Shown piece by piece: positions 5,044 through 34,912 of a stretch of 64,000 nt of DNA. The stretch is from positions 186,001-250,000 of the forward strand of contig RHPI01001037.1 in the NCBI GenBank assembly GCA_009103225.1. The letters run 5' to 3'. How positions within the stretch are numbered: position 1 is the first letter of the stretch; every line of letters begins with the position of its first letter. The position numbers and the translations under genes are program-made. The notes beneath the pieces are model-generated. The model made no database searches. It worked only from the letters and a program-made list of their open reading frames with translations, and had not been told where the DNA came from. The DNA comes from Chlorokybus atmophyticus (taxonomy: Eukaryota > Plantae > Mesostigma and Chlorokybus algae).

Positions 5044-5778
5044 CGCTGTCTTTTGCACTATTTGCCATCGTGGCTGTCGCAGCATCTTGCACGTCACTGC
5101 AATGCATTAGTGTGCTTGTAAAACAGAACCATGTGTGTGGTTTAACATCAGCCCTGTGTGCTTTAGAGCCCCTGCTGATCCGCGCTTTGAAATTCTGCCC
5201 GGAGACAGCTACAGAGTGCAGATACAAAAGAAGGCGATGGCACGCTTTAACAGCATGTTGGATCAGTAGCAACTGCCATGCATGTGCACTTTTGTTCACA
5301 GTCCGTAGAGTTTCTTCGTTTATTGTTGGGGCAATAGGAACTCGCTTTGGCCATGCGCATGGTTATGTTTGGTTCTGTGTTGCATTGGGACATGCACTAG
5401 TGCCAATACTGCCATATATTCATGATGCATGATGCATGATGCATGAAGTTACAATCCTGTCTGGAGGCGCTGACATGCATGTGCTGTCTGTGCGCATGGG
5501 GGGGGTTGGGCCAGTTCCTGGCTTGTACATACTCTTGAACACAACCAGTCTTAAGTAGCTGGCTTGCTGTAGGGCCAAACCACACCGCAACCACTGTCAA
5601 CGTCAAAAACTACTACACTACTAAGCTTTACATAGCTACTACTACTGTTTCTGCTGCTCATGTACTTGCTCATGTAATACACCGCAGTTTCTTGTATACC
5701 ATTAGCAGTGCGCTGGCGTTGCTCTCATTGGTCTGCTGTAGCTTGATTGGCTCCAAGGAAGCGCATTGCAGTCATAGC

Positions 5779-6207
5779 TTAATCATTATCCTCAGGAGGC
5801 GGTGGTGGTGGGGGAGGGGTCGGTGGTGGGGGAGGGGACTTGATGCACTTGTTGTTTGCCCCATCCACGCACACGCACTCAGTGCACGTGTTGTAGATTG
5901 CGCAGTTGGGTGGGCTGGTGGAGTCCTTGGCCTGCTCTGCCGGGGGGACGCTGTTGGGCTCGCAGGTGCACTTTGTGTCGGGGACTGTCGGGCACTTGTC
6001 GCCGACACGGTTGGCACAAGAAGACTTCGTTCTGTCAAGCGTCCGCTCGCACAAGTACAGCTCCATGCCAGCATTCGGCCCAACCGGTGGGACGTACGGA
6101 AAGACCTTGTACTCGTAGCAGAGCTTGCCGCAGGGAAACTCTGCACTTACTGGCACCGCTGCGCTTGCGCACAGCAGCACCAGCACCAGTGCCACGACGA
6201 TTTTCAT
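5779..6207 (-). CDS. Single-exon secreted cysteine-rich protein with C-terminal Ser-Pro5/polyproline tail (142 aa)
   Basis: ATG at 6207, signal peptide MKIVVALVLVLLCASAAVPVSA, 12 Cys in the mature part, then SPPPPPTPPPPPPPPEDND and TAA. Confidence 0.75.
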   Translation of the reverse strand: MKIVVALVLVLLCASAAVPVSAEFPCGKLCYEYKVFPYVPPVGPNAGMELYLCERTLDRTKSSCANRVGDKCPTVPDTKCTCEPNSVPPAEQAKDSTSPPNCAIYNTCTECVCVDGANNKCIKSPPPPPTPPPPPPPPEDND

Positions 6208-8295
6208 CCTTGCTCGCGACGTCAGGCCAGCTTCCTGAAGGTCACAGAACAGTGCCATGAGCCACGAGTAATTGCGCACCACACAAGCAGTACAGCTGTC
6301 AGGCATGGGAGCATCAAAGAGACAGCCCGCAGTACCAGCACGCATGCAATGCACAAGCCAGGGAGACGGGCATAACACAGCAAAGCCAGAGAGAGAGTGG
6401 CAAATTCGTGTCATGACCAACTCCATGGCTACAGGCAGCAGTGCAGCAAGCCTCCCACAACTCACGCAAGCACAAGCGAGAGAGACAACCAGAGGTAAGC
6501 TCAAACCTGTGAAACTAGCACTTGCCTTTGGGGTGGGTAGGCAGTGGTGGCAATTGTGGCGGCAGTAAAAGCGGGCGACTGCAAATTACACATGCACTCT
6601 GCAACCCATGCACAACATCCGCTTATGTATGTCACACTGTGCGACTCGCACACGCACAGCCAAGAAAGGCCGGTTCAGAACCCTGTCATGGAGAGGCCTA
6701 TCAGGCCGAAGAAAGCAGGCCACGCATGCTGGCGAAGGTGTGACACGTAGAGGACGTACTGCTTTAACGGCCCATTGGCGCAGTGCTCGGCAACGCGTAG
6801 GGCTGCTTGCGCAAGAACGAAGGACCGAAGCCTGCGCATGGCGCTGCTTTGCATGGCATGCACGGTGCATCGGCATGCGTGGCACAGCTTACTGGAATAC
6901 CGGTAGGTAGATAGTCCATTTACATAGTTGAATGTCATGCATGACATGTTGCACGACGCCCGTTTCAAATTGCAAGCCGACGTACTGTAAGGTATTGAAC
7001 ACGTGAGGCGTCTACGAACCACCATGGAAACGGGCCATGTCACGTCGCGAGTGTCGGCGGCGCACGAATGTGTCGTGAGAGTTGGGGCCTCCGACCTGCC
7101 CGTTCTTGTCATCCAATGGTGGTCATGTGCCACGTGCTGCGCATTGCCGCAGGTTTACATGTAACGCTGTGTGCGAATTAGTGATCAGACTGGATCATCC
7201 CGTGTCTCCAAGGAGCCATTATGGCTCTTGGTTAGTAATTGGTTGGAAAGGTGGCTGTAAACATAAAGAAGTCAACCCTTGAAAAGCCACATTTGACAAC
7301 CAATATGATAATTCGTACGTAACACGCATGTTTGTAACACGAAGGTTGTTTAGTGCCACATTACACGACATCTATTGATAACACTTCTCTTGGTAGAAGA
7401 GCTCAACATCTTACCACGATCCTTCTTCGTGGTATAACGTTAAGTTGTTTACTTCATTACATATGTATGTTCGTAAGTGTGGAGTATTCAAGAATTGTAA
7501 TTGAGCCGATGCAAGTTGTTTACCGGGTAGCCGAGCACTGGCATATACAGTGCATGATTCCTTCAAATTACGTATAAGAGTTGCAAATATAGAAGTCGCA
7601 ATCAAACAACTCAAGCGGCCCTTATGGTAAAGGCTAAATGCAAACAAGCACACATCAAGATGCTTAACATTTCAGTGGGTGCTTAGGTTGAGTTGCAACA
7701 ACTGACGCTCCAATCAAGATGAGATATATGACATGGACATTATGACCCATAGGCATCAACAAGGGCCCCCGGGTGTGGGGCGAGAAGATACAGCATGTAG
7801 CGTAGAACAACCGCAGAGTGTAGTGTAGGGAGAGGGCAAGGAGAGGTTAGATCCTAGCTTTCATGATGTAGCATGAAATGCGTACATGTACACGTGACAG
7901 ATATGTTGTTCTTGTCATAGCCTCTGTGTTTAATGGGGAGTTAAAATAAGATCTTAAGACGAGCTTGAACGGTGTCGTTTATTCGATACATTGCGGATGG
8001 CGACCAGTGTTTGGTATTCACGTATCATGTACAAAAGATGCGAAGCGGAGGTTGCGTATGCAAATGAGCATGAACATGCAGTGCCACACCCACGTCCACC
8101 ACTGGTTGGTGAGTAACACTCATCAACCGTTGATAAGTGCTTTGAGTCAATCACCGCTAAGGCATGCATAGCTATGTATTGGCATAGGTAGGCATGCATG
8201 GATATCGTATGTTATTTTACAGATGATAACTTAGCTGCACACGCAAATCGTCGTGTATATGGTTGCTGGGTTGCTTACGCGCGCACGTGTGCATA

Positions 8296-8564
8296 CTATT
8301 TAATATACAGATGTGCACAGGCTGTGCACATCTGTATATTATATAGCGCACACACGCACGCGCAAGCGCCACACGCGTGTGTGGCGCTTGCGCGGTTGCC
8401 CACGTGCACCCCGGGGTGTTCAAGGGGCCTCGATTAAACAGCACCCACGAATTTACACCTCTTGCACACAACAATCCGCTTGTAAGCGGATTGTTGTGTA
8501 AACCACTCACACAACAGCGTACCATGCTCGCTACCACACTCCGGACACATAAGCCAACGCTAGC

Positions 8565-8643
<79 letters not shown>

Positions 8644-8717
8644 CCTCCCTCCGAGGGAGTCGTTGGTCAGCTGGGGTGACCCTTGGTCAACCCCCCACTG
8701 GGTTGGGGGGTCACCCC
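8296..8717. repeat. Cluster of near-perfect short-loop inverted repeats (hairpin/cruciform array)
   Basis: 20-bp stem with 1-nt loop at 8301-8341; 16-bp stem with 4-nt loop at 8359-8394; 16-bp stem with 2-nt loop at 8466-8499; 7-bp stem at 8645-8659; 10-bp outer stem at 8673-8717. Confidence 0.9.
8567..8640. repeat. (CT)n microsatellite, about 37 units
   Basis: Directly visible perfect dinucleotide run. Confidence 0.99.
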
Positions 8718-9820
8718 TTCACCCACATGACGAAGCAGTGTAGGCAAGGCACTGCATCTTACTAGCGGCTTGGCCTCAACTTTAGTCACGACTTGACAAT
8801 TGGCTCGATTTACTTAAAGCCAGAAAGTTGTCAGTCGCTTGCATTGCCTGTGCATTGATATAGCCTACAAGATGCATATCATAGTGATATTACAGCTATA
8901 ATGTGCGCAGCTCGCCAGGCAGAGCACAACATCGGCTTCATTACATGTGCCACCGACTGACACGAGTACGAGCTAAAAAAGTGTCGTAAGTATAATGACC
9001 ATGCGCCGGATGACAAGTTCATCCCTTCGACGACAGAGAGATCTTTAGCAGTCATAGAGCCTCCTTCCACAAGCTGATTACCAATTGCGCACGCATGCTC
9101 AAGCTTAGAGGGCATAGAAGTTCAAAGGCTAGCCAGTGTCGGGCTTCATGTCTTGAACGAGGGCTGTTTCCTTTGATTACTAAGTGCTGCACTCGATGAA
9201 TTCGACCTCAGCTAGATCTACATACGGACTTCGCGAGTAAGATTCTCAAGCAAAGTGACTTCTTTTCGCAAGTCACGAGATTTGCGACTTAGCGAATTCG
9301 GCCAATGCCTCACTGGCCGATTCAACTTTTCAATCCACTTCAATTCACGAGTGAACTATCACTCGAAATGTTGAGAAAGGCTTGCGCCTCAAAATTCCCA
9401 AGTGCGGAGAAAGCGCGTGGCCACCTGAGACTGCAAAGGAAAAGAAAGATAACGAACCCTACTCAAGCTTCAATGACCTACCCAACCCTGAAGTTGAATC
9501 CAGCTTCGACGTTCCGGGTGGTCGTAAAAACCGCGTATCTTGTTCAAACAGGTAAATCCTCATGCGGCAATAAGAAGCGCTTTAAGTGCTTTTGTGCGCT
9601 GCCCAAAAAAGCTAGCCAATGCCTTAGAGACTTCGCAACAGTTCGCTTGGCGAGGAACTTAGGATAATAGCGACTTTGCTAGATCCTCCCTGCTTAGAGT
9701 CTTTTGGGTGTCTTTCTCTAAATAGGTTAGAAGCCAAAGTTAATTAGGTTCTAAACTAATTGACTCGTCGTTCTGTTACCTTCCGCCGCAGCTTCCCGTC
9801 ACCGCACGAGAACTCGCCCC

Positions 9821-10007
9821 NNNNNNNNNNNNNNNNNNNNNNNNNNNNNNNNNNNNNNNNNNNNNNNNNNNNNNNNNNNNNNNNNNNNNNNNNNNNNNNN
9901 NNNNNNNNNNNNNNNNNNNNNNNNNNNNNNNNNNNNNNNNNNNNNNNNNNNNNNNNNNNNNNNNNNNNNNNNNNNNNNNNNNNNNNNNNNNNNNNNNNNN
10001 NNNNNNN
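9821..10007. other. Assembly gap (187 N)
   Basis: Run of N. Confidence 1.
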
Positions 10008-10117
10008 CCAACTTCGGAAACTATGAAGTGATAATATTTACCCTTGTTGTTGTATTTTAGAATGCAGAACCACTTGAAACTAGCATCACTACAATGTTCA
10101 TGTACGTACAGTGGATC

Positions 10118-10623
10118 TGTCACAAATTGGGATAAATTGTGACAGACCTCACTTATGGTAGTGTCTTTTACTACCATAGCCTAGTGGTCGGGCCCCAATT
10201 GTTACAATGGTAACGGAGCTTGACGTCTCAGGTTCAATTCCCGTAGGGGACTGAGGCAGATCCAAGGCAAAAACAAAACATTGGGGGCGGCTTGCCCTAG
10301 GCTGGGCGCGGGATCACGACCTGCGCGCTGAGCCAGTTAAACCTAAGGCCGCGTGAGCGGTCGCGCTGCGATGGCAGGTCGCGCGGTGAGGATGGCCGTT
10401 CGGTTGGTCAAGACCGTTCGTGGGCCGGATCCATCAGGCCGCGGGCAGACCGATCGTGGTACGGTCGCGATCACGGCGACGTGGGCTAGTGCCTCATTGG
10501 ATTATGAGGAACTCATGGGTTAAATTGGGGAGGAATGTCACAAATTGGGATAAATTGTGACAGACCTCACTCATGGTAGTGTCTTTACTACCATAGCCTA
10601 GTGGTCGGGCCCCAATTATTACA
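10118..10623 (+). mobile_element. Complete non-autonomous LTR retroelement (TRIM), 506 bp
   Basis: LTRs at 10118-10206 (89 bp) and 10536-10623 (88 bp), both TGT...ACA, differing by 2 substitutions and 1 indel. 5-bp TSD GGATC at 10113-10117 and 10624-10628. PBS-like TGGTAACGGAGC at 10208-10219. PPT GGGGAGGAA at 10527-10535 abuts the 3' LTR. No recognisable coding capacity. Confidence 0.93.
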
Positions 10624-11341
10624 GGATCACTTGTGCATTGCAACGTGCTCGTGACGTGGTGCTGTAAAGAAGGCAACCACAGCTGTATGTATGATGTCAG
10701 GGTACCCTGGATCACCTATCTACCAGTAGTAGTGGTGGTGACTAGGTAGTCACTACATAGTCACCACCATCACAAGGTAGGTGACGTACCTACACAATTA
10801 CCTTGTCAAACGCCGTGCTTTTAACGTGAGGCTTGCATGCTGACGCAAAATGTGATAATGCGATGGTGCAATGGTTGCTATGCGTGTCGTTATTGAAGGC
10901 TTGTGCCAAGTTGTTGTGTGTAGCACTAAACATAGCGCTGCACACCATGTGGAACCCATGAGTTCTTTATCGCGATGTTGGCAGCGTTTTTTATTTCAAT
11001 GAGTTTAATATTTATAGCTTACAGTTAGTAGCACGCTTTTCCTCATCGTACTTGCACACAAATGCATGCCACAACACCAGATTACATCCTGTATACACGC
11101 AATGATTATTGCAAATGCATGGGGCAACAAGGTCCATCGCCAACCATTGGCAATCCTCCTTCTTGAACACAATGAATAAAAACAACATCATACACTGGAA
11201 TGCCAATTCAAGTGCCCCAACATACATTCCTAATTTACTTCACATCCTTTCAACCAACCATTCTCGACTAGTGGTGTTGTCTTAGCGCTGTATTGCGTTC
11301 GTGCAACCCACGGCGGTGCTTGTCTCATTGTAAATGCCGGA

Positions 11342-13988
11342 CTACACATTTATAGCGACAATCACATCACGTTCGGCATAGCTCGCATCGTAGCATGATT
11401 GGCCAGCCGGTTGCTTTGACTTGTACACATATGCAGAGTAGTCGTAGAGGACCACGATTAGTGGAGAAAACGGATGGAAGAAAGTCTCTTGGACACACTC
11501 TGCAGCTCGAAGAACACCATTACTGATATCTGGATACTGCTTAACGGTGACGGTGAAAGCATAGGTGGAGGTAACATAGTTAAAATGCTGGGAGTAGACA
11601 ACGTCATCATTGTATTGGCTCCAAGTGTACAAAGCAGTCTGCGTGTGCTTTGGAGCACCTGCTCTGCCGTAATACTTCATGACAATTGTTGTAGCGTTTT
11701 GCATCTGCCAACCAGGAAACAAAGACATTGTGAGCTGCCATGGCTTTACGTCGCTGCAATATGCACTCGAATGTTAACTTACTATATCCAAAGCGCGCGC
11801 GTACAACGGGGGTCTGAAGGTCTTGTTTTGCTCATGCACGTTTCTGTATGCTTCAGTAAGCACAGTGTTAGTTACATTTCCACGAGAAGTCTGCCAAGCA
11901 GCGATCACATCAGGTGGCTGGTAAAACATTTTTCACATTCAGACTCTATGACGACATGAAGCACAAGACATACCACAGCAGTGCCGACAAACTTCGAGGT
12001 GGCCATGAACAGGCTCAAGGTCGTCAGAAACTCATCTGAAGGAGCTGTGCGTGTGTAGTTGAGCTCAAAGCCGAGTGTCGCTTCTGTGTGCAGCACCTTG
12101 CCAGTCGCATGTGACGAACCTCGATATAGCCAAAGATGCATTGGCATCGACCTGCATAGAGAAATGGCTTTGCTGCCGTTCAGAGAAATTACACCAGGTC
12201 TAACATGCATGCATGGTAAGCCATACACACCTTGTAACCTCCTTTGGCACCATTAGCAACAGCCGTTGTCTTTAAGTACTTCAGTTTACAGACAAAGGCG
12301 ATGCGATGCTTGTGGCCATCATTGAGCACGCTTACAAACGGCGTGATGTCAACTGCGAATGCTCACCACTGCGGCCGGCTGTTGAAGCTCACCCGGTCGC
12401 TTGCCAAATGTCACATCCGCAACCACACCATCCAACAGCACGTGAACAGCAAACGGCGCGTACGGGAATCCTGTTTGAGAGTAAATCAACCTCACCTGCC
12501 ATGGTACGATGCTGGTTTGGCTCTTTGTTGCACAACAATAGTGCACTCACTTGCAATACAGCTACGCAACTCAGCAAGAGAGCAGCATAGCAGTGTAGCA
12601 AGAAAGAAAAAGAGTTAGACATGTAATCATGGCGTGCATGCATCGCCCTTACCTCCAGCACTGCTCGTTTGATGTTGGTGGCTGTTTTGACAGCGACGGA
12701 CGGGGAGGGTGACAAGGTTGTAGTTGTGTTCTCAACGGGTATTCGTGGTAGCATCTGCGACCTTCATGCAGATACTGGCAGGACAATGCCAGCTGCATCC
12801 GGCTTGGGGTATGCTGCTGTTGTGGCGAAAAACTTTGCGGTCACAGCCACGTTGTAGGGGAAGTCGCAGATACATGTATCAACATCAGGAAACTCCACAA
12901 ACACCCGCAGCTCGCCTGACCGCCTCGGAAGAGTACTGCATAGTACGCTTCACCCCACAACACAAAGAGGTCATCAGCTTTGGCATAATCACACTGCCAG
13001 TCAAGGTGCCTACAGCACGTAGGTCTCATACTTCGCTTGTACAATGTCTCACCTGTGTGATGTCACCTGCGAAGTCAAACCAATGTTTCATCGGTTTGGC
13101 CTCTGGTTTGGCCAGGACGATTGCGACGCCGCGACGGAGAAAGCCAATGCTGTTCTTATGCCTTGTGGCAGGTGCGAGGTCCAGCACAGTAGATATATCC
13201 ACACCTGCGTGGCAATCTTGTTGAAGCTGCTGTTGTTCGAGGTCTCGTTACCACGTACTACCTCACCTCGAGGCCATACGCCAAGCGTGAAAGGCGTATC
13301 AGGTGGCTGGTATGGCGTGCATTTGGCCACGCATTTGTGCTGAACACGTGCAACAAGCTCGACGCGTGCCCACGTGTTGCAGGTAGGCGGAGAGTATGCA
13401 GACACGAACACCGGGGCTTCCTTCAGAACAGAATATCTCGCCAGAAGCACGGCACATGAAGGCGTCTGTGGCGCAGTCGACGGCGGGGGTCTTTGCAGGT
13501 ACCATGCCTGCCAGTCGTCGCCGCAATTGCATGATACACAAGAAAACTAACCGACACACTGACGAATGGTGTTGTGCAGTGCAAAGCGAAGGGACAAATT
13601 GAACATAGAGAGATTAATTTTCAGCACAGTAGACCTGCTTGATCAAGTGACTACACCGGATTGCACGGAACCGAACAGGGTGTTACCTTTGTAAATGTGG
13701 AAGCTGGATCCGGCAAAAGGTCGGTATTGAATGGAGTGGCCGCTGCCAACGCTAAGGACAGCAATGCCAGTATCAACACCACGTGTTGAGTGGGCTTTGC
13801 ATGGCGCCCTTCTCCGCCTTGACACTCGACCACACCACACCACACCACACCACACCACACCACACCACACCACACCACACCACATTACATCACACCACAC
13901 CTGCAGGAGCATGGAGCTCAGTGTTTATACCGCGTGTGCTAAGATGCTGATAGGGCGATAAAGCCCAGGAGACGCATAGACTGCTCAT
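11342..13988 (-). pseudogene. Peptide-N4-(N-acetyl-beta-glucosaminyl)asparagine amidase A (PNGase A)-like gene, apparently disrupted
   Basis: Ordered PNGase A-like segments: hydrophobic leader; PSCAVLL..APVFVSAYSPPTC..WARVEL; GDITQ; PYNVAVTAKFF; GIVLPVS; TNIKRAVLEV; VLLDG; VDITPFVSVLNDGHKH; VDAN/HLWL. In-frame TGA at 12764-12766, frame shift near 12350-12390, and a frame shift splitting VDAN from HLWL near 12140. Confidence 0.7.
13831..13900. repeat. (CACAC)n pentanucleotide microsatellite filling a predicted intron of the PNGase-like locus
   Basis: About 13 near-perfect CACAC units. On the minus strand the array starts at the CAG|GTGTGG donor. Confidence 0.9.
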
Positions 13989-14299
13989 GACTATGAACGG
14001 TTGGTGCAAAGCAGAACGTGGTCATCATACACGAAAGTGCAAGTGTACATACACGGAGACTCCATGGCAGACACTGATATGCCGTGGAGATACCTATCTT
14101 GCAGATTGAGTACTGAAGCACTTGTAGGTGGTATGATATGAAAGAGACTGTGGTTGCAGCGGTGCAACGGATAGTGGATACTTCTCAAAACGACAAGCAC
14201 GAGTTGAGCAGTACATCAAGCACACAGTACAAGCTTGACAGGACTTCACGCGTGCTTTGCTTCGTTGTGCGCTGTACGCTAGCAAACGTAGCAAGTGAC

Positions 14300-16053
14300 A
14301 CGAGGTCTTGTCAACAACCTCCGCCACACCAGTGTGTCACTTCCAGCGCGAGTAGCCTAGGAAGCGCCCTCGTCATGGCCAGCACACATCCGAGTGCTTT
14401 CTTCTGCTCTGTGATGTGCGTTCTGTCAGCAGTTTGCTGCCGCTTCAACTGCGCCCAACAACTCCTGCGGTGCATACAAATGGTAAGTGCTGGTGGTTGC
14501 TGTGCCAAAGTGCCTTCGCTGCAAAGCACCTGCAAGAATGCAACCAACACGCGATGCATATAACACCCGTTACCCCCTGAGGGCCGGAAGTGAGAGCAAG
14601 CCAATCGACCTTCATGCACATGTATGCGATACGCAATTGCCCAACGCCGGCGCAATCAGCAGGCACCGGCACAGCTTGCGACGTGCTCATCAACTCGTAG
14701 GTGGGTGTGTATTGACGGTTGTTGAGGGCAACTGTTCAACAGTTGTGCATGACATTACCGTCGCTGGGCTGTTTGCAGTACTTGCTTGCTGCATGCGCCA
14801 CAGAGTTTTTGGTTCAACCGAAACCTTCTTTGTATGAGGACGCGAGGTTGGTTAGCTGTTGGCTGGTGTGGAAGGAGCCGAGCCTGCATGGTTTGTGATT
14901 GGCAATGCTCTTGCATACTACACTGCCAGCTATTGTAGTAGAGGCAAGTGTTCTGCCTGGCATATACGGTGCGGCACCCAGTACCAACGATCAACATTGC
15001 ATGTTGGCAGGCACGGCTTGCCTGTACAGCACCGTGCCTCTGCCTGGCTGTACGCAAGCCACCATTGATTCTGTAATTTGCGTCCAGACCAAGCAAGGCA
15101 ACACCTTTGAAAGAAAGGCACGTTTAGCCGCACCTGCTCGCACTGTAGAGTTCAGAAGTAAGGCATCACACAGATGAATCAGCAGTGTAAGATTTACAAA
15201 CATTTTGAGATGATCAAGAGAGGGATGGGATAAAGCAGTTGCAAGCTGCAAGCACGAGTAGAAGGCCTACCACTTATGGCTGACGGTTGGACTACGTTTG
15301 CGACCATGCCATAAGTCTGCAGTGTGGGGCGCGTGCGCGCGTGTGTGCGTGCGCATGCATTCTCTAACCTCCAGCTTCAAGAACTGACGTACAAGGCCTA
15401 TTGGCACAGGCCACTGCGACTGCCAACACGCACATGTACAGACGATTTGAGCTGCCTCCGTCACTGTGTGCAACTCACAAGCGAGCTTGCTGGAAAGCGA
15501 TCAACACACTCTTTGTGAAAGCAAGGCTGCTGGTCGGTTGGCTGCTTGCTTACAAGCGTTTTCTGTTCTGTCTTGCGCTAGAGAAAGGCACGCATTCATT
15601 CAATCTCAAGCAAGCTTGCCGCTTGACAAATGCGCACATGCAAGTGCTGGCATTTTCAACTCACCTAGTAAGCGCTCGGACAGGTCATTCTAAAGCTCAA
15701 GTTTGCTGGCATTGTCGCGCTGCAAAGCCTGTGTCGTGCTGCAGGCGCAACAACCCAAGCGTGCACGTTGCCTGGCTCAAGCTGTGTGTGACGCAAGTCA
15801 TGCTTCCCAGCACACTTCGCCACCATGGCGCCCGCGTGCCTCACCCCGTGCGTTCAGCTGCTTCACTGCATGCAGTAGTAGCAGTCCTCATCACGGCCTG
15901 TACCGCCGTCCTAAGCACGTACCAGGGAACCCGCCTACAGATATTTGGGCTGCAGCGAGGACTGGACGAAGCGGCGGCGGCGGCGGCAGTTGGAGGAGGA
16001 GGAGGAAGAGTAGGCGGAGCAGCGGCGGAGGTTGTGGACTGCAGTGTCTTCAT
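14300..16053 (-). CDS. Probable multi-exon gene of unknown function
   Basis: ATG at 16053 (MKTLQSTTSAAAPPTLPPPPPTAAAAAASSS, transit-peptide-like). Short GT-AG bounded open segments follow (SQWPVPIGLVRQFLKLE; TYGMVANVVQPSAIS; VALLGLDANYRINGG). I could not assemble a consistent model; the 3' end is approximate. Confidence 0.3.
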
Positions 16054-16127
16054 CGGGTGCTGACAGGGCGGTTTTGTGCAATCTGCGAGGGCTGGTGCTG
16101 GGCTTCACTGCTGTGTAAGCAGTCAGG

Positions 16128-17992
16128 ATGCCGCAGCGCCATAGCAAGAACAACAACGACAGGGGGCAGTTCACCTATGAGGAGCGCAGGAAGCTGCGAT
16201 ACGGCACTCAGGTACGGCAGTAGTAAAGCTTGTCGTCAGCATGTGGGCAGGGGAAGCCAAGTTTGATATGTTGCTGATTTGCACTTGATGCCAGCTGCAT
16301 GCTTGGTGAAATGGTTATTTGTAATGAGAACGGCAGGGGTTCAGCTGGTGCGTACTGCAGTTTTGGGTAATGCTGCAATCCAACGTACTCTTTGAATTTG
16401 AACTGCTGTTGTCACAATGTTAATTTGTTGTTAATGTACCATTTCGCTGTCGTTACAACCATAGATTTGAAACTGAGCGCTCATGCTTTCAGCTCAATAA
16501 ATATATATATGTGTTGCTGATTTGCACTGGGTGCCAGCTGCATGCTTGGTGCAATGGTTATTTGTAATGAGAACGGCAGGGGTTCAGCTGGTGCGTACTA
16601 CAGTTTTGGGTAATGCTGCAATCCAACGTACTCTTTGAACTGTTGTTGTCACAATGTTAGTTTGTTTATGTACCATTTCGCTGTCGTTACAACAACAGAT
16701 TTGTAACTGAGCGCTCATGCTTGCAACTCAATGAACGCACGTTGTTTCTTTAGGTTAGACCATGTATATGTCACCAGTTCCGCTACCACCAAAGCTTTTG
16801 TGACGCAGGCAGAGCGCCTTGGCAAGGACTCCATCAAAGCATTTGATGCATGCTGCTTGTGTTTGCATACGGCTTCCGACCCCCTGGCGTGCCAGAGCGG
16901 ACACCTGTTCTGCAAGGAGTGCATTTACGAGTGCCTCCTGCAGCAGAAAAAAGATATTAAAAGGTGACAACGATGCCTGACTCCTTGTGGCATGTGTGGT
17001 GGCTACTACCACGAGTAGTGGCTACTATCAAATCTCGCATTGTATTGTTTGCACGTCATCGGCATGGTTTGGAGTACTCGACATACATACACACAGCAGT
17101 GGCTTTGCAGGCAGCAGGAAGCATACTCTCAGCAGTTGCTGGCTGATGAGGCAGAGGCAGCCGCACGCGCGAATGCACACAGAGAGAAGGAGCTTGAGCT
17201 GTTTGAGCGATCAAACAACAGTGCCGCTCCTCTCGACTACAGCCACACTATGTACACAACGTGTACTCTGCAGCTTTTCAGCATTGCGTATGCGCTTGCT
17301 GTTGCATGCTGTCTGACCTTTGGTTATTGTCCACATACAGCAGGGAGAATATCAGCAATGAAGCTGAGCAGAGGACGACGCATGGAGCGTCGAGCGTCAA
17401 GACCACGCAGTTTGAGGAGGAGGCTTTGAGAGGCATGAAAGCTTTCTGGCTGCCTTCAATGACTCCTGAAGCCAACGGACGAGCGGAACCGCCATCATCG
17501 GACACAATCTGCCCAGAAGGCAGAGAAAGACTGCGCCTAAAGCAGCTGTTTCCTATCCACTTTACAGAGGTAAAGCAGAGCACATGCTTGTTGACAAAGT
17601 GTTGTGCGCTAAGGCATGCTGTCATGCGTAGCATTGTGATACATGTGATTGGTGGGCAGGTTCCCGAGCACGCCAGGTCCCAACAGGGCCGCCAGGACGA
17701 CATCTTTATGTGTCCTTCCTGTAAAGACACCCTGACCAACACGACGAAGCTCGTGACGGTTTCCCTCTGCGGGCACGTGCTGTGCAGCGAGTGTGCGAAG
17801 CGGTTCATCATTCCAGATAAGGTTTGCTTCGTCTGCAGCAAGAAGTGCAAGGAGAAGGACCTGGTGGAGCTGCAAAAGGGAGGCACCGGGTTCGCCGCGC
17901 ACGGAGAGGATCTCACAGCCAAGACCTTTAAGCACGTTGGTGGCAGCTCAATAGCCAACGTTGATAAGCCAGGCAAAGCGATACCTAAATAG
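16128..17992 (+). CDS. NOSIP: Nitric oxide synthase-interacting protein / CSU1-like RING E3 ligase
   Basis: Exon 1 (16128-16211) MPQRHSKNNNDRGQFTYEERRKLRYGTQ joins exon 2 (16809-16963) AERLGKDSIKAFDACCLCL. Also AFWLPSMTP, C-terminal RING CPSC...CGHVLCSECAKRF...CFVC, and LQKGGTGFAAHG; TAG at 17990-17992. Confidence 0.96.
16269..16732. repeat. Tandem duplication of about 230 bp inside NOSIP intron 1
   Basis: Copies at about 16269-16498 and 16512-16732 align along their length with scattered substitutions and small indels. Confidence 0.93.
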
Positions 17993-26569: not shown

Positions 26570-28938
26570 ATGCGCGGGGGGCGGCGGCGTGGGGCGGTTG
26601 GCTTGCTGGTGATCGTCGTGCTGCTCGGGCTGGTTCTCGTGCAGCAGCTGTCCGTGCTGTCCAGACTGCCGATTGGGGCAAGAGCAGGAGCAGGAGCAGG
26701 AGCAGGAGTGAAGGTTGGGACGAGCTTCAGCGACGCCGGCAGCGCTGCCGTGAAGGAGGCCAAGCCTGGTGCTGAGGGTGGCAAGCTCACAGCAACACAA
26801 AGCTCCTGTGCGAACACCTCCGCCCTCCTGCCTCCGGCTGCTCTGTCATGGACGGTGGAGGCGGAGAGGATTGTCGTGCAGGCGTTTACGAAGCTGCAGT
26901 CACCTCCCGACTGCAAAAGCGCACGAGCAGTGAGTGCTGAAAGCAGCAGTCCGTGTACAATGGTTACAAAACCATGCACTTGTAAGACACTGAGCATTAC
27001 ATGCTTGTGGTGCATGGCGCCATGCTTGCCGCACAATTTGGCGTAAGCGCTCTGGGTGGCTGCAATGATTGCATGTCTAAGCCGGTGTATGCTCCGTACA
27101 TGCTCAACGCACTGGATTCGCAGCTCCCACAAGTGGCTTGTGACCTTTGCTTTGTTCAGCAAATCAAACTCACCATGGTCAAATGCATGTGCTTGTTCCA
27201 GTCCTTCAAGGTCTACTTTGCATCAACAAAAGGGCCGATTGCTACCTGTGACAATGACATGAATGTTGTGAGCAGGTGTTTCATGTGCCCCGCGAGTTTG
27301 GGTTCTACGCGACTATGCACTCATTCCAGCTGTCCTGGGTCATGGCCCTCCATCTCAATCGCACACTGCTGCCGCTGCCCAACCCCTGGGAGGTGAGCAA
27401 AGCAGCAGTGTAATTTTGTGTTCTATCATACAACCATTTCACGCAGTATTGTGAAGCAGATTGTGTATGCTAGCTAACCATGTTGTTGCATGAGACCAAC
27501 AGATGGTTTTGTTGCGCAGGGTTCTGTCAAAGAAATAGAGAAAGGCATAGCTGGTTACAACCTGTTTCGCAAAGTCGTTCTTCCAGCGCGCTGCGAAAGT
27601 GTGTTCAAGACGGTCAGGATTCATGGGAAGGAAGCTGATGCAATGGTAAGTTCATTTGTGAGCATTGTCAAGGCTGCCACGTTTCCTGCTGCATGCCCAG
27701 GTGCTGATGCAATGCCGACATGTTGTTAGCTGACAGGTGCTGCAAACGCCAATACATTGTGGTAACATTGTGTCACCATCCCACGCTATCCACAACAGCT
27801 CGGCCCTGAGGGTGCACTTCTGCGGCGGGCGTCCAGGCCAGCTGGCCTTGCGGGCTGCGAGCGGCTTCCCCCCATGGCTGTGGCAGGTATCAACTGCTTG
27901 GCAACCACTGGAGTGAGGTTGTTTGCTGCCTGTGTTAAGTTCTGCTACATGAATGAACCCTGTGCGACTGGTTGTTCATCACTGCAACGCGTGTGCAGAA
28001 ACTGTTGGCAACTCCAGGAGCGCTGTCCATTGGGCCTCAGTTTACTGCAGCACATGCGCAGTTCATGCTGCATTCTATTCTCTCCAAGCATATGCTGGAC
28101 ACGGTGGCTACCTTTCTGCAAGACACTACTGCGTCGCAGTCTCCCGTTTTTCCAGATGTGGTCGACCGGCCAGTAGTGGGAGTTCATGTGCGAAGGTATG
28201 GGTTTCAACACTATGAATCTGTATCTGTTGTGTGCAGTACAAAGTCCTCGTAGCTTTGCCGCTTTGCGCAGGACTCGGCGGTCATTCTGAAAGGTGTCAC
28301 GCACAACCCACCACCATATGTTGCAGGGGTGACAAGTTGAATGAAGATGCGTACTTTCAAAAGCACAAGGCATACCGACCATTGTCCGACTACTGGCAGA
28401 GAGCTGCTGTGCTTGGCGGTTGGCAATCAGGCTGCTGCCTGCAAACTATGCTTGTCATGTCCGATGAACCATCATTATTTCAGGTATGGGATATGTATAC
28501 TGCCGCAGCTGATTGGCGAGCATGCCCTGGCAATGCTGAATACGCTTGAACAAGATTGGTTGACGATAGCATGCGGGGTACATCAACACACATCGTGTTG
28601 TTGCGCAGGACAAGCACTCAGTGGATGACAGCTTGAAAGAAGCTCTGCAGAACGCCCAAATTAGTTCCAAGTGCCATCAAGTTGTGCCAGCAGTCCACTA
28701 TGATGAAGGTGCCATTGGGGCAAGTGTGTTGTCGCAGCGGACATCGCAGACTCAGATTGCTCGGTTGGTAGCTTCCAGTAGGGAACTGTGTCACAAGGCC
28801 GATCAGCTTGTGGTCACAGCTTCCTCCAACGTGGGTCGATTTCTGATGGAATACCTTGGTGCCAGCAGGCGTGTTGCCCAAGTTGAGCTGCAAGGACCAT
28901 TAGGGGACTTTACTGACCTCATCTGGCATATAAAATAG
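26570..28938 (+). CDS. GT23 alpha-1,6-fucosyltransferase-like (FUT8/NodZ family) type II membrane protein
   Basis: N-terminal signal anchor GAVGLLVIVVLLGLVLV; motif I VGVHVRR|GDK across a GT-AG intron; motif III LVVTASSNVGRFLMEY; stop at 28936-28938. Confidence 0.82.
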
Positions 28939-29210
28939 GCTGTACAGGGTTGACATCAGCTATGCAATGCCATGACAACCTAGACAGGTTGCAGCACCAA
29001 CCCCACCATTTGCTGGGCAGAATCAATGTCGCGCTTGATTGTATTGATATTTGCATCTTGGCATGGATGCCACAGGTGGCAGAACTGACGTCTACACGTT
29101 ACACCTATGACTGTCAACATACACAGACAGAAGCCGAGCTGTCAACACAGCACATCCAGCTTCAGTCCGCCTTGCCAACTGTCAACCTGCCACGGCTGCC
29201 ACAGCTGTGC

Positions 29211-31505
29211 TCAACCACCAGTGCGGGTGCGGGCTTCCTTTTCAGCTTTCAGCTTTGTAGGTGCCCTCGTCACCAGATCGTACACCTGCGAACAGGTGTC
29301 TCAATCTTACATCCGGCTGTCGGACATGTTGCGCACCAGCGCATCCGTGTTGCTTCAAGCAAAACTGACCTTGCGTACTCCAGTAGTCAGGCCTGTGCCA
29401 GGCAGCGCGCGGCTGTCAACCCAGCGAACAGGGTATGCTGACTTCGTGGTCTGTGCTTGCAGCTCTGACACTGCCAGACATCAAGCATTGAGATGACATT
29501 CCACAAAGATGCTGCATTAAGGCGTGATGCACGACAACTCATACCACCACTTACATGAGCCTTCAATGACTAGCTGTTCAACATGGAGGTCATGTCGCAC
29601 GTGTGAGAAGATATGTCTTAGTTGGCCTACTCGAGATCGCCGCAGGACTTTGCAGGTGGTGATGCTGATGCCCAGCCCCTTGAGCAGATGCTTATTCATT
29701 GCAGCACGTAAGCTGGCTTCAGAAGTAGAAGCACCTGAGGCCAAAACAACGGCGGGAAACTCCCAGAGACCAGCAAGCAGGCCTGACTCTGGTCGCTGAA
29801 CCAATAAGTAGAAGCAGGCGTCGGCAGCCTGGAGTTGCACCACACACACAGCAACTTGTTCTTTGCGCTGTGGCCTGCGCACAACTGCTGATGCATCAGA
29901 CCCCTCAGCCAAGCTCTCATGCACATGTCTCCCTCAACCACGTAGCGGCTGCCAAGTTTATTTACGCACGCTTCTTGCAGAGGCAAACACTTTGGCAGAT
30001 GCATACCTTTGCTTGGGTAGTCTGTCACTGGGCGTCCGTTGTCATCTTGACCGGCATAAGCGTGGCACTGCGTAGACACTGGACACTGGCTACACTTGGG
30101 GTTCCCCGGCGTGCATATCAGTGCACCCAGTTCCATCATTGCTTGGTTCCAATCACCAGGACGTTGTCGATCAACTAGTTGTGCCGCAAGCCGCCTGCCA
30201 GGGGCGATTTGCTGAGATCACTGAGAGCGTAACCTTTAAACATGAAAGCTATGCACCACGCTAGAGGTTTAACAAATTCAGCACCAAAGGTCACAACTGC
30301 ATGAGCAAACGGCAGAGCATGTCTTGAGGTTGTGACAAAAGGGGGGGCATTTTACCAGTGCGTGGCAACTGTCTGTGCTGCTTTTGGATCAGCTGATATC
30401 GCCCGCAACCGGGATAATACGCGAATGACATTGCCATCCACCACTGGTGTATCGACACTGAATGCAACAGAAGCAATGGCACCAGCTGTGTATGGACCGA
30501 TTCCTGTGCAGTAAACATTAGGACAATGGGGGACTGATGTCGCATTTGCAAGGCAAGTCAGTGCCGGCTCTTAAAAGACGTGCAACCTGGTATCTTGCGC
30601 AGTTGCTCCACAGTGCAGGGCAGCTGACCGTTGTGATGCTTGACCAAATAATCCGCACCCTATCCAAGTGTCGGATCATCGGCACAAGACGCTTCGTAGA
30701 CACTGCATGCCAAAGCCATCACATCGCGACATACACCCTAGATGAACACTCACCTCCCAGAGGAACTTTGCGCGGCGATAATAGCCCAACCCTGCCCACA
30801 GCTCATTCACCTCCTGCAAATATATACACACGGTTGGTACTGGTGGTGCTCAACTGTGTCATTGAGATGCACAGCCAGGATATGTGTGCAAGTCATTCCT
30901 GCAACCTGGCAAGGGCCATATGAAATGGCAACAGATTATGTAGTATGAGATGGTGCTTGTCGTGTTGTAATGCTGATGGCAGCTGGCAATGTAAAGCAGG
31001 AGAAATGAAACTTGGAAGCACCAATACTGCTGTGGCTTACCTCTAGAGTTGCTTTAGCTAAGGCTGCAACTGTGGGCCACCGCTTCAACCACCGTTCAAA
31101 GTATGGGATGACAGTCACTATCTGTGTTTGCTGCGACATCACCTCGCTGACCCACACCGCATACGCAAAGTGCTGTGGATCATCAGGTGGCGGTGCTGTG
31201 GGTTCAACCAGAGACTTGGCATTATAACGCCAGGGGAGCACGCGGTGATTGCTGTCATACCACTCCAACAGCTGAAGCCTCAAAAGAGAGCATTCGCTGG
31301 GACTGAAATTAGAGACAAAGCTTGCTGATCTCAAGTCTTCAACATCTGGGATGGAGCAGGCACTTGGTTTGGAAGGAGGCAGCTGCCGCGAGTGAGAAGC
31401 TGATGCCTTGGGTGTGTGTGACAAAGTCGGCTGCTTGATGCTCGCGGAGCGTGTTGCAAGCCGTGCAGATGTACGCACAGCAGTGCTGCCATTGGACTTC
31501 ACCAT
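29211..31505 (-). CDS. MUTYH: Adenine DNA glycosylase MutY homolog
   Basis: [15 protein letters not shown]; [14 protein letters not shown]; [16 protein letters not shown]; Fe-S motif [24 protein letters not shown]; NUDIX-like [15 protein letters not shown]; C-terminal GLTTGVRK|VY; TGA at 29211-29213. Confidence 0.96.
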
Positions 31506-31861
31506 GTCGGCGATGTTATGGGTTATTTGCCATTTATGGCTAACAGGAATCGTACTGCTTCACGCATGCTGCTTGTGTTCAGACGGCAGCCTGCAAGAGT
31601 GCGCAGTTGTTGGTGTGGTTATGCAGTATTCAGTATACACTGTGCACGTGCCAACTCTCGTTCACACAAGCATGCTACCGGGGGGCAAGAGGGAGAAGAA
31701 AGTGGGACACGCTAGCCGTTGAAGTTCCGTACACATGAATCATCCTCAATCAGGAGCAACCAAGCTGAAGGTGTCACGGTGCGCATTGCATGCATGCGCA
31801 ATGCATGCAACGCACAATGCAGACACTTGCGGAGCTGAATTTCCTGAGGCATACCACTGCG

Positions 31862-32062
31862 TCATTGCCTGTGGTATCCTATGCGAGACGCTGCAGACGG
31901 CTTGTGAGGCGGCGGAGGCGGAGGCGGCAATGCCGCGCTTTGCTGTTGCTGTTGCAGGATAGCCCCCTGAGCAGCCGCAGCCGCGGCCGCCGCTTTGACC
32001 TCCTCCAGCTCCCGCTTGTCCTCCGCCTTCAGCTCGATGCGGGTGGGCGGCCGGCGCAGCAT
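31862..32062 (-). CDS. CDC26: Anaphase-promoting complex subunit CDC26 (66 aa, single exon)
   Basis: MLRRPPTRIELKAEDKRELEEV matches the CDC26 N-terminal signature MLRRKPTxIxLKxED; ends SRIGYHRQ like plant CDC26. Confidence 0.9.
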   Translation of the reverse strand: MLRRPPTRIELKAEDKRELEEVKAAAAAAAAQGAILQQQQQSAALPPPPPPPHKPSAASRIGYHRQ

Positions 32063-32305
32063 CCCGGGGGCCAGCAACGGCGGCAACCACGGCGGCAACC
32101 ACGGCGACAACGCCAACAGCGATCAACCCAAAAACCCTGGTCCGGGGATTTGAATCAAGTGTTTGTTATTTGCATGTTTGGCGTTACTTCAAACCAAGAC
32201 TGCCGTTGGGCCAGCCGTCAGCGCACAGCAGTGTAGTTAGCGGCGGGTGAAGAGGCGGCGCCCTGCCGCCCCACCGCCGTCTGTGAGCCCACACCATCCC
32301 CACTA

Positions 32306-32547
<242 letters not shown>

Positions 32548-33312: not shown

Positions 33313-34912
33313 CTACTTTTTGTAGGTGTTGTTCAGGTAGTCCACAATGTCACCACTCTCGAGCATCTCCACGCCAGTATTGGGATCATACAAGTACGGC
33401 ACCTGTAGCATCAGTCCCACATTAGCAACCAAGTTGGATAGTTTGGCAAATCGGTCACTGCTGTGTGCCATTCGTGGCCATGCCCTAAACCAAACTGACC
33501 CAAAATACCAATGCAAATGCGTCTTGTCAGTGGCATAAGGCACCTGGAAAAAGCCAATCTTCTCCTTCAACAACTTGCGCTTGTGGCTTCCACGGGGTGT
33601 CGTGCGCATGATGTGAGGCAGTTCCAGCTCGCTTAGGGTCTCGCGCACCAACTTGGTGAACGGGGAAATCTGGGAAGTGCATACCCAACATTGGTCATAA
33701 CACTTCTACATTCAAAATGCCGATGCAACCACAGGCAATGGAGATGTGGCTGCGTCGCATGCCGAAGGTAGACAGCCATGTGCACTTGCCTCGTAGCCCC
33801 AAAGCTCCAGTGGCTTTGCGGCCGACTTTGCAGGGATGTAACGCGATCCATGGTTCATGCGGAACAGTAGCCCGATACCAGCAGTCAGAGCGGTGAGCGC
33901 ACCCAACTTAAGCTGTTGACAAGGATGCTGTTTAATGCAACCCCCCCTTCACTGACGCAACAGACTGCCACTGTGGACATATCACAAATAGAACACAATG
34001 TGTCAACTGTGCCTACCGTGAAAGGCACAGATGCTCCGTTCCCATACTTCTCAAACAGGTAGTTGATGATGTCATCCGACTCGTACATGGAAACACCAGT
34101 GTTGGGATCCACCTGCAGACAGCGATCAGGCTGCAGTAATAGTTGTACAGCATCTGGCGGTATTTGCATCCGACTCGACTCACAACTTCTGGCTGTAAAA
34201 ATTCGTGGCTTCAGCATACCATGTAGGGATGTTGGGATTTGCCGCCAATCTCCTTCACTTTCGGGCGGTAGGTCGGTCCACCAGCAGGAGTTGGATAGAA
34301 TAAAACATCGAGGTTGAGAACATTCACTGCTTCCCTCACTTTGCGACAGAAGGGGCAGCTGTTGATATACAGTTAAGACAGCAGGAACGCTAAGAGACGC
34401 TCAGAGAGCTTTGTGTGCAGTTGAAGCCTTAGCCAAGTGCCACATTTGTTTATTGAAAGAGAACTGAGACACCAGTATGCGGACGGAACTCTCCTCACCC
34501 TTCAAACTCGTAGATTTCAATGGGTTTGGGCGGCAAGGCAGTCCCGCTCCCGACCTCCGACGCCACGAAGGCGCCGGTGGCGAGCCTAAGGATGGCGACG
34601 GGAATCGAAAGCGCGATATCCGCCAGCTTGTCCGTCCGTGGGATAAACAGTTTCTGCTTCAACGGCTGCTTCTGTAGCTTTCCACCTGATGTTCATGAGG
34701 CTCAGGACATGTCTGTTGCAGAGCTCATTCACTGCACATTTAACACAGCACGCACTGTTTTTGGCGTCGGCTCTCACGGTTCGTGCATGGCGAGCAGGCG
34801 CAGGCACCACGCTTGGGCGAGTGCTGGCTGGCTTTAAGACGAGTTTGCTTTCTTTACCAGCTGCGCCACCCACATGCGGGCGTGACAGCAGAGCACTTGC
34901 CGTCATTGCCAT
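33313..34912 (-). CDS. Plastid-targeted tandem GST-N/thioredoxin-fold protein
   Basis: Transit-peptide-like MAMTASALLSRP...; PIEIYEFEG|CPFCRKV; VDPNTGVSMYESDDIINYLFEKYG; second domain PLELWGYE...LVRETLSELELPH...DPNTGVEMLESGDIVDYLNNTY. Confidence 0.88.

What the first reader, a model, noticed from the sequence alone, without database searches (positions are those of the whole stretch)
29211..32062. CDC26 placed as an apparent upstream ORF of MUTYH: candidate new bicistronic transcript
Seen: a 66-aa CDC26 ORF ends only 356 nt upstream of the MUTYH ATG on the same strand. The spacer holds two normal-length GT-AG intron candidates (31765-31854, 90 nt; 31591-31678, 88 nt) and lacks the GCC-rich leader seen at many other gene starts here. 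The CDC26 ATG has C at +4 (GGGATGC), while the MUTYH ATG has G at -3 and +4 (GACATGG). No in-frame fusion was found. Established: in Arabidopsis CDC26 is translated as a uORF on the TTM3 mRNA, and polycistronic mRNAs read by leaky scanning are known in green algae. Inference: CDC26 kept the uORF arrangement with a different partner, coupling APC/C dosage to 8-oxoG repair.
Basis: partly seen in the sequence, partly recalled or inferred. Interest (0 to 1): 0.8.

Follow-up and report, generated by a model that had tools for sequence, protein, structure and literature searches.

The report
CDC26-MUTYH two-gene mRNA in Chlorokybus
In the early-branching streptophyte alga Chlorokybus, the tiny cell-cycle gene CDC26 sits in the first exon of the messenger RNA of the DNA-repair gene MUTYH, so one spliced mRNA carries both; elsewhere in plants and green algae CDC26 shares an mRNA with a different gene, TTM3.

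Summary
Both ORFs are real and lie on the minus strand. CDC26 (32062..31862, 66 aa) matches Pfam PF10471 above its cut-off. MUTYH (ATG 31505, stop 29211) splices to 479 aa, identical to the published Chlorokybus atmophyticus model Chrsp29S04478. CDC26 is not on record as a called gene.

One spliced RNA contig starts at 32139 and runs through the whole CDC26 ORF. It removes a single 264-nt GT-AG intron (31854..31591) whose donor lies 7 nt after the CDC26 stop, then continues into MUTYH. The mature spacer is 92 nt.

Published work reports CDC26 paired with TTM3 in land plants and chlorophytes. I found no CDC26 upstream of MUTYH in eight other loci, so this looks like a partner swap.

- Not shown: a single full-length molecule, exclusivity of the two-gene form, or translation of either ORF.
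- AUG depletion before MUTYH is absent (3 intervening AUGs, about 2.9 expected).
- The junction comes from one run only.
- "Coupling APC/C dosage to 8-oxoG repair" is untested.

This scan has already noted other two-gene mRNAs in this genome, but not this pair. Verdict: a new member of a known kind.

The parts
32063..32139 (-). 5' leader of the shared transcript, at least 77 nt. It has no AUG, is 0.68 GC, and holds a 12-nt GCC-rich repeat in 2.9 copies (32077-32111).
   Evidence: The 5' end of RNA contig X1 record 1 is at 32139. Composition and AUG list. Repeat. The true transcription start is not mapped.
31862..32062 (-). ORF 1: CDC26, 66 aa plus stop, entirely within exon 1. Its AUG is the first on the contig; context cccgggAUGc.
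   Evidence: Pfam PF10471, E 4.9e-8, above the cut-off. N-terminal residues 1-23 align to human CDC26 in 3hym/4ui9. Not on record as a called gene.
31591..31854 (-). Intron 1, 264 nt, GT..AG. The donor starts 7 nt after the CDC26 stop and the acceptor lies 85 nt before the MUTYH AUG.
   Evidence: Joint 31589/31854 in X1 record 1, 255 letters on the shorter side, CT..AC on the + strand. No contig depth in bin 31602-31778. No TGTAA or AATAAA inside.
31506..31590 (-). Exon 2 leader. With the 7 nt at 31855-31861 it forms the 92-nt mature spacer. It holds two small uORF AUGs, at 31567 (14 codons) and 31533 (5 codons). A third AUG at 31865 overlaps the CDC26 stop (13 codons). All three end before the MUTYH AUG.
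   Evidence: Spliced mRNA reconstruction and AUG list.
29211..31505 (-). ORF 2: MUTYH (adenine DNA glycosylase), 479 aa in 8 coding exons; AUG context gccgacAUGg. Further introns: 31040..30814, 30753..30660, 30586..30504, 30355..30195, 30006..29885, 29554..29471, 29369..29286.
   Evidence: All joints are GT-AG in RNA contigs, and several are also seen in runs X2 and X3. The translation is identical to P0025, Chlorokybus atmophyticus Chrsp29S04478. HhH-GPD, EndIII Fe-S and NUDIX_4 domains. Nearest relatives are land-plant MUTYH at 45-51% identity.
28939..29210 (-). MUTYH 3' UTR region, with TGTAA at 29103..29099. It abuts or overlaps the 3' end of a convergent + strand gene whose stop is at 28938.
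   Evidence: The contig runs from MUTYH into + strand exons whose introns are GT..AG on the + strand. TGTAA position. The poly(A) site is not mapped.

Best explanation
CDC26 and MUTYH are transcribed together from a promoter upstream of about 32139 into one nine-exon mRNA. Exon 1 holds a short AUG-free, GC-rich leader, the complete 66-codon CDC26 ORF and 7 more bases. A 264-nt intron is then removed. Exon 2 starts 85 nt before the MUTYH AUG, so the mature spacer is 92 nt.

Inferred translation:
- Ribosomes loading at the cap initiate at the CDC26 AUG, the first on the RNA (context G at -3, C at +4).
- A minority scan past it, or resume scanning after one of three very short intervening ORFs, and initiate at the MUTYH AUG (G at -3, G at +4).
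- MUTYH is therefore made at a low level from the same message.

Eight exon junctions lie downstream of the CDC26 stop, so the mRNA is probably also exposed to nonsense-mediated decay, as reported for Arabidopsis CDC26/TTM3.

Evolutionary reading: CDC26 kept its habit of riding as ORF 1 on another gene's mRNA, but in the Chlorokybus lineage the carrier is MUTYH rather than TTM3.

Shown here: the ORFs, the splice that joins them, and the identity of both proteins. Inferred: exclusivity of the two-gene form, the translation mechanism, decay sensitivity, and the direction of the swap.
For: -: the 5057-nt contig X1 record 1 matches the window with no other letters. It covers 32139-31854, skips 31853-31590 at a GT-AG joint, and continues through all eight MUTYH coding exons. 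It carries 14 GT-AG joints in total, so it comes from RNA. No contig lies inside intron 1.
- the stop is retained, the spacer is 92 nt, the CDC26 AUG is the first AUG, and the three small ORFs end before the MUTYH AUG.
- ORF 1 is CDC26.
- ORF 2 is identical to the published Chlorokybus MUTYH model.
- the GC-rich leader sits before CDC26, and intron 1 has no TGTAA or AATAAA signal.
- (PMC11291117): CDC26 is ORF 1 of a conserved two-gene mRNA with TTM3 in plants and chlorophytes. Leaky scanning is the mechanism tested there. Typical loci have 5' UTRs of 54-83 nt and inter-ORF spacers of tens to hundreds of nt, which this locus fits.
- (PMC7896298): in Chlamydomonas a putative APC15, another small APC/C subunit, is ORF 1 upstream of a putative DNA-repair metallo-beta-lactamase. 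That is a parallel pairing.
Against: - Only one run (X1, same strain) covers the CDC26 exon and the joint. X2 and X3 cover only MUTYH pieces.
- Contigs cannot show molecule ends. The same contig also fuses MUTYH with a convergent gene, so contig continuity alone is weak. The argument rests on the splice joint itself.
- A start site inside exon 2 that gives a MUTYH-only mRNA would leave no trace in contigs.
- AUGs before ORF 2 are not depleted: 3 observed against 2.9 expected. An added inter-ORF AUG more than halved ORF 2 output in the published reporter tests.
- The CDC26 AUG has a purine at -3, so it is not clearly weak.
- No ribosome profiling or proteomic data are available.
Confidence: 0.72

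Rival explanations
1. Two mostly independent genes. CDC26 and MUTYH are expressed mainly as separate mRNAs, and the joined form is a minority read-through transcript made by intergenic splicing, as described for hundreds of Arabidopsis loci.
For: PMC9768141, listed, reports 271 Arabidopsis loci that produce polycistronic read-through transcripts, with intergenic splicing named in its title. Contigs show presence only, not proportions or ends. Only one run holds the joint.
Against: A separate CDC26 mRNA would need its 3' UTR inside the 264-nt interval. Yet no contig lies there in a run where the flanking exons are assembled, and the interval has no TGTAA or AATAAA. The GC-rich leader typical of a first exon is before CDC26, not before MUTYH.
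Confidence: 0.17
2. The CDC26 ORF acts only as a repressive upstream ORF, or is a decaying copy, and the working CDC26 is encoded elsewhere in the genome.
For: Earlier scan note s1-172098 reports a second CDC26-like ORF elsewhere in this genome (I did not check it). uORFs of this length are commonly repressive.
Against: The ORF here is intact and starts exactly with the conserved MLRRxPTxIELK segment, which in the human protein is the solved segment (29-residue chain) in the Cdc26-Apc6 entry 3hym. It scores above the Pfam cut-off. The other copy is reported to carry an in-frame TAG, so this one is the better candidate for the functional gene.
Confidence: 0.07
3. Assembly artefact: the assembler joined unrelated RNA fragments at a shared short word.
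For: The same contig does merge two convergent genes at their 3' ends.
Against: The joint has exact GT..AG ends. Only 2 ambiguous letters are shared between its sides, with 255 and more matching letters on each side and no mismatches. It uses exactly the donor and acceptor predicted from sequence.
Confidence: 0.03

Closest known systems
CDC26/TTM3 bicistronic locus of Arabidopsis and green algae (Lorenzo-Orts et al. 2019, as summarised in PMC11291117 and PMC6973038)
   Same: CDC26 of about 65 aa is ORF 1 of a nuclear mRNA whose longer ORF 2 encodes an unrelated enzyme. The 5' leader is short, the stop is retained and there is no fusion. Exposure to nonsense-mediated decay is likely.
   Different: ORF 2 here is MUTYH (HhH-GPD, Fe-S, NUDIX_4), not the CYTH-domain phosphatase TTM3. 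Here an intron is spliced out 7 nt after the CDC26 stop. Whether Chlorokybus still has TTM3, and what lies upstream of it, was not testable.
Chlamydomonas Cre12.g513245/Cre12.g513254: putative APC15 followed by a putative DNA-repair metallo-beta-lactamase (PMC7896298; listed in Dataset S01 of PMC11291117)
   Same: A very small APC/C subunit is ORF 1 and a DNA-repair enzyme is ORF 2 on one mRNA. The inter-ORF spacer is 82 nt there and 92 nt here.
   Different: A different APC/C subunit and a different repair enzyme, so the loci are not homologous. That locus is backed by Iso-Seq and ribosome profiling; this one by a single short-read contig.
Exclusively polycistronic nuclear loci of chlorophyte algae read by leaky scanning (PMC7896298, PMC11291117)
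   Same: A small ORF 1, a short leader, a spacer of tens to hundreds of nt, and a better start context at ORF 2 (G at +4) than at ORF 1 (C at +4).
   Different: The organism is a streptophyte alga, not a chlorophyte. AUGs before ORF 2 are not depleted. Three tiny ORFs lie between the two starts, so reinitiation may contribute.
Other candidate two-gene mRNAs noted by this scan in the same genome (for example TatB-NTH1, s1-194310)
   Same: Same genome and same layout. In TatB-NTH1, ORF 2 is also a base-excision glycosylase of the HhH-GPD superfamily.
   Different: Different ORF 1. Those pairs lie 8-45 nt apart within one exon, whereas here an intron separates the ORFs. I did not check those notes.

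Membership tests
CDC26 (APC/C subunit, Pfam PF10471) | N-terminal MLRR-x-PT-x-(I/L)-E-L segment starting at residue 1. In the human protein this is the solved segment (29-residue chain) in the Cdc26-Apc6 entry 3hym. | tested here: met
   Pfam 34.2 bits against a cut-off of 24.5, profile positions 1-39. Residues 1-23 align to human CDC26 chains in 3hym and 4ui9.
CDC26 (APC/C subunit, Pfam PF10471) | Very small protein (under about 100 aa) with a low-complexity tail. | tested here: met
   66 aa; poly-Ala, poly-Gln and poly-Pro runs after residue 23.
CDC26 (APC/C subunit, Pfam PF10471) | Physical association with APC6/CDC16 in the APC/C. | not testable with these tools
   Needs pull-down or complex structure prediction with the Chlorokybus APC6, which I could not fetch.
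MUTYH / MutY adenine DNA glycosylase | HhH-GPD catalytic domain with the catalytic Glu (SEVMSQQTQ) and Asp (VDGNVIRV) motifs. | tested here: met
   PF00730 hit. Both motifs are present in the spliced protein. The assignment of these motifs to E. coli Glu37 and Asp138 comes from my own knowledge.
MUTYH / MutY adenine DNA glycosylase | Fe-S cluster loop Cys-X6-Cys-X2-Cys-X5-Cys. | tested here: met
   PF10576 at its cut-off. The pattern [17 protein letters not shown] is in the spliced protein.
MUTYH / MutY adenine DNA glycosylase | C-terminal NUDIX-like domain that distinguishes MutY from endonuclease III. | tested here: met
   PF14815, E 1e-13. Best full-length relatives are named adenine DNA glycosylase, at 45-51% identity.
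Bicistronic nuclear mRNA of the green lineage | Both complete ORFs on one mature transcript. | tested here: met
   A spliced RNA contig carries both, and the exon junction itself links the two. No single-molecule read was available.
Bicistronic nuclear mRNA of the green lineage | No monocistronic forms (exclusively polycistronic). | tested here: inconclusive
   No contig lies in the intron, but contigs cannot show starts or ends, and filters drop records.
Bicistronic nuclear mRNA of the green lineage | Weak start context at ORF 1 and strong at ORF 2. | tested here: inconclusive
   ORF 1 has G at -3 and C at +4; ORF 2 has G at -3 and G at +4. No Chlorokybus-specific consensus was built.
Bicistronic nuclear mRNA of the green lineage | Under-representation of AUG between the ORF 1 start and the ORF 2 start. 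| tested here: not met
   3 observed against 2.86 expected from shuffles; P(<=obs) 0.68. This is within the range of the published loci (0-29).
Bicistronic nuclear mRNA of the green lineage | Both ORFs translated. | not testable with these tools
   No ribosome profiling or proteomics for Chlorokybus was on hand.
CDC26/TTM3 locus | ORF 2 is the CYTH-domain triphosphate tunnel metalloenzyme TTM3. | tested here: not met
   ORF 2 carries HhH-GPD, Fe-S and NUDIX_4 domains and is MUTYH.

The most novel reading that the evidence does not exclude
CDC26 is an obligate 'hitch-hiker' ORF in the green lineage. It is always expressed as ORF 1 of another gene's mRNA, and the carrier can be exchanged (TTM3 in chlorophytes and land plants, MUTYH in Chlorokybus). 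That would mean selection acts on the two-gene format itself, for example stabilising or loading onto polysomes an mRNA for a 66-codon ORF, and not on a CDC26-TTM3 functional link. Together with the APC15 / DNA-repair locus of Chlamydomonas, it would also suggest that small APC/C subunits are repeatedly paired with DNA-repair enzymes.
Probability: 0.3. Interest if true: 0.7.

Novelty: new member of a known kind. Interest (0 to 1): 0.55.

Why it matters
The CDC26/TTM3 mRNA is the textbook conserved two-gene nuclear mRNA of plants, and it has been read as hinting at a link between the cell cycle and polyphosphate metabolism. A streptophyte alga in which CDC26 rides on a different gene would separate two ideas: that CDC26 needs a carrier mRNA, and that CDC26 needs TTM3. 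It would make that question testable by swapping carriers.

The locus also adds a case with RNA support to the evidence that two-gene nuclear mRNAs occur in the earliest-branching streptophytes, not only in chlorophytes. It also flags a CDC26 gene that is not on record as a called gene and that sits in what would be read as the MUTYH 5' UTR.

Tried and rejected
- An exact look-up of the CDC26 protein found no called gene. The word search found no relatives, because the protein is short and low-complexity. I therefore could not survey partners from the CDC26 side.
- The spliced MUTYH protein has no window reference and I did not type it in. The full-library search with exon 1 returned it as P0025. 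P0025 is held only in EukProt, with no contig on record.
- No MUTYH context from another streptophyte alga (Mesostigma, Klebsormidium, Chara, other Chlorokybus species) could be retrieved. The eight loci checked are chlorophytes, a moss, probable land plants and one unknown metagenome contig.
- The Lorenzo-Orts 2019 paper is not held. I cite it only through PMC11291117 and PMC6973038.
- The supplements of Gallaher 2021 are not held, so its full locus lists were not checked for MUTYH.
- Rfam finds nothing credible in the leader or intron. The bacterial-type promoter/terminator scan is irrelevant for a eukaryote.
- In-frame CDC26-MUTYH fusion is rejected because the stop lies before the donor.
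- Depth values were not used, because each is a mean over a whole contig.

Full report
**What is in the sequence.** Both genes lie on the minus strand.

- The ORF 32062..31862 encodes 66 aa. It starts MLRRPPTRIELK and continues into poly-Ala, poly-Gln and poly-Pro runs.
- It matches Pfam PF10471 (ANAPC_CDC26) over profile positions 1-39, at 34.2 bits against a curated cut-off of 24.5.
- Its first 23 residues align to human CDC26 in the APC/C structures 3hym and 4ui9. In 3hym, the Cdc26-Apc6 entry, this N-terminal segment is the whole solved chain (29 residues).
- The next ATG-initiated long ORF starts at 31505 and carries an HhH-GPD domain. ORFs further downstream carry the endonuclease III-type Fe-S loop and a NUDIX_4 domain. 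That combination defines MutY/MUTYH.

**RNA evidence.** Four small public runs hold parts of the stretch. I laid them on 27000-32300, stopping short of the long dinucleotide repeat.

- Run X1 holds a 5057-nt contig that matches with no mismatches.
- The contig starts at 32139, covers the whole CDC26 ORF, and skips 264 nt at an exact GT..AG joint (31854..31591 on the minus strand).
- It resumes at 31590, runs through the MUTYH ATG, and removes seven more GT-AG introns.
- Runs X2 (a different study) and X3 (95-99% alike, so probably a diverged lineage) confirm several MUTYH joints. Neither covers the CDC26 exon.
- No contig lies inside the 264-nt interval.
- The contig also continues into a convergent + strand gene whose introns are GT..AG on the + strand. 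Contig continuity alone therefore proves nothing.
- The splice joint is what counts. It needs reads in which the last bases of the CDC26 exon are joined to the exon that holds the MUTYH start.
The real intron uses the donor of the first and the acceptor of the second.

**Anatomy of the mature mRNA.**

| Element | Detail |
|---|---|
| 5' leader | at least 77 nt, no AUG |
| CDC26 start | cccgggAUGc |
| After the CDC26 stop | 7 nt, then the exon junction, then 85 nt |
| MUTYH start | gccgacAUGg |
| Mature spacer | 92 nt |

- Three small AUGs lie between the two starts. One overlaps the CDC26 stop (31865, 13 codons). The other two are in exon 2 (31567, 14 codons; 31533, 5 codons). All three end before the MUTYH AUG.
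- The spliced MUTYH is 479 aa, with the catalytic Glu and Asp motifs and the C-X6-C-X2-C-X5-C loop.
- Leader and CDC26 exon are 0.68 GC. The spacer, intron and MUTYH are 0.51-0.55 GC. The GC/GCC-rich first-exon signature therefore sits before CDC26, consistent with one promoter.
- The intron has no TGTAA or AATAAA. A TGTAA lies 108 nt after the MUTYH stop.
- AUGs before ORF 2 are not depleted: 3 observed against 2.9 expected.

**Organism and annotation.**

- A full-library search with MUTYH exon 1 returned a 479-aa protein, P0025. It is identical to my spliced prediction.
- P0025 is named EP00898 Chlorokybus atmophyticus, jgi/Chlat1 Chrsp29S04478. This confirms the organism named in earlier scan notes.
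- The 66-aa CDC26 is not on record as a gene product.
- The closest full-length relatives of the MUTYH are land-plant adenine DNA glycosylases at 45-51% identity.

**Comparison with what is known.**

- PMC11291117 describes CDC26/TTM3 as a deeply conserved bicistronic locus of land plants and green algae.
- Its supplements list the pair as colinear or bicistronic in Chlamydomonas, Volvox, Dunaliella, Auxenochlorella, Prototheca, two Chlorella species and Nannochloris. They contain no MUTYH entry.
- No held paper links CDC26 and MUTYH as a locus. None treats nuclear polycistrons in Chlorokybus.
- I looked 2.3-8 kb upstream of MUTYH, or as far as the contig reached (295 nt on one Logan contig, about 1.2 kb on the metagenome contig). 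The loci were Tetrabaena, Apatococcus, Picochlorum, Ostreobium, the moss Ceratodon, two low-GC Logan contigs and one metagenome contig. None holds a CDC26 motif.
- The pairing therefore looks specific to the Chlorokybus lineage. The closest relatives could not be tested.
- One parallel: in Chlamydomonas a putative APC15, another tiny APC/C subunit, is ORF 1 upstream of a putative DNA-repair metallo-beta-lactamase.

**Mechanism.**

- Shown: co-occurrence of both ORFs on a spliced RNA, with the stop retained.
- Inferred: cap-dependent initiation at the CDC26 AUG, with MUTYH made by ribosomes that scan past it. The published algal work supports leaky scanning, short leaders (medians 54-83 nt) and spacers like this one.
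- In that work an extra inter-ORF AUG more than halved ORF 2 output. The three small AUGs here should therefore keep MUTYH output low, or require reinitiation after very short ORFs.
- Eight exon junctions lie downstream of the CDC26 stop. Sensitivity to nonsense-mediated decay is expected, as reported for Arabidopsis CDC26/TTM3.
The carrier-mRNA reading is at least as likely.

**Limits.**

- One run only supports the joint.
- Contigs cannot show molecule ends or proportions.
- A start site within exon 2 would be invisible.
- There are no translation data.
- TTM3 and the second CDC26-like ORF noted by the scan (s1-172098) could not be examined.
- Records resembling human DNA are dropped silently by the read tool, so gaps in MUTYH coverage mean nothing.

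**Verdict.** This is a real and well-anchored two-gene transcript. It is a new member of a known kind, with an evolutionary twist: CDC26 has changed its carrier. This scan has already reported several other two-gene mRNAs in this genome, but not this pair.

Noticed in passing
window 32309-32545: A perfect (GA)118.5 microsatellite on the gene's strand, about 170 nt upstream of the 5' end of the CDC26-MUTYH contig. It could be a GAGA-type promoter element or simply a repeat.
   Followed up: no
window 27276-28938 (+ strand): A convergent spliced gene with GT-AG introns on the + strand and its stop at 28938. Its 3' end meets the MUTYH 3' UTR (stops 272 nt apart), so the assembler fused both transcripts into one contig. 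The two exons tried gave no Pfam hit.
   Followed up: partly
window 33313-34912 (- strand): The upstream neighbour on the same strand has two GST_N_3 / glutaredoxin-like segments and an N-terminal Ala/Ser/Arg-rich stretch that looks like a transit peptide.
   Followed up: partly
window 31780-31821 (inside intron 1): A GCATGC-rich 15-nt tandem and palindromic tract in 2.7 copies. Intron 1 holds 8 ATGs that splicing removes from the spacer (counted by eye on the intron sequence printed).
   Followed up: no
L003 (Apatococcus) 5001-16899 and L004 (Picochlorum) 5001-8723: ERO1 lies downstream of MUTYH in both trebouxiophyte loci: the next gene, same strand, in Picochlorum; two genes on, opposite strand, in Apatococcus. 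This may be conserved local synteny. ERO1 was not looked for in the Chlorokybus window.
   Followed up: no
window 29371-29584: Run X3 contigs match at 95-99% with a C>T at 29410 and a diverged intron of the same length. A related Chlorokybus lineage shares the MUTYH splice sites.
   Followed up: no
window 31505-31300 (MUTYH residues 1-70): A 70-residue Ser/Thr/Ala/Arg-rich N-terminal extension precedes the conserved MutY core. It may be an organelle or nuclear targeting region. No prediction was run.
   Followed up: no
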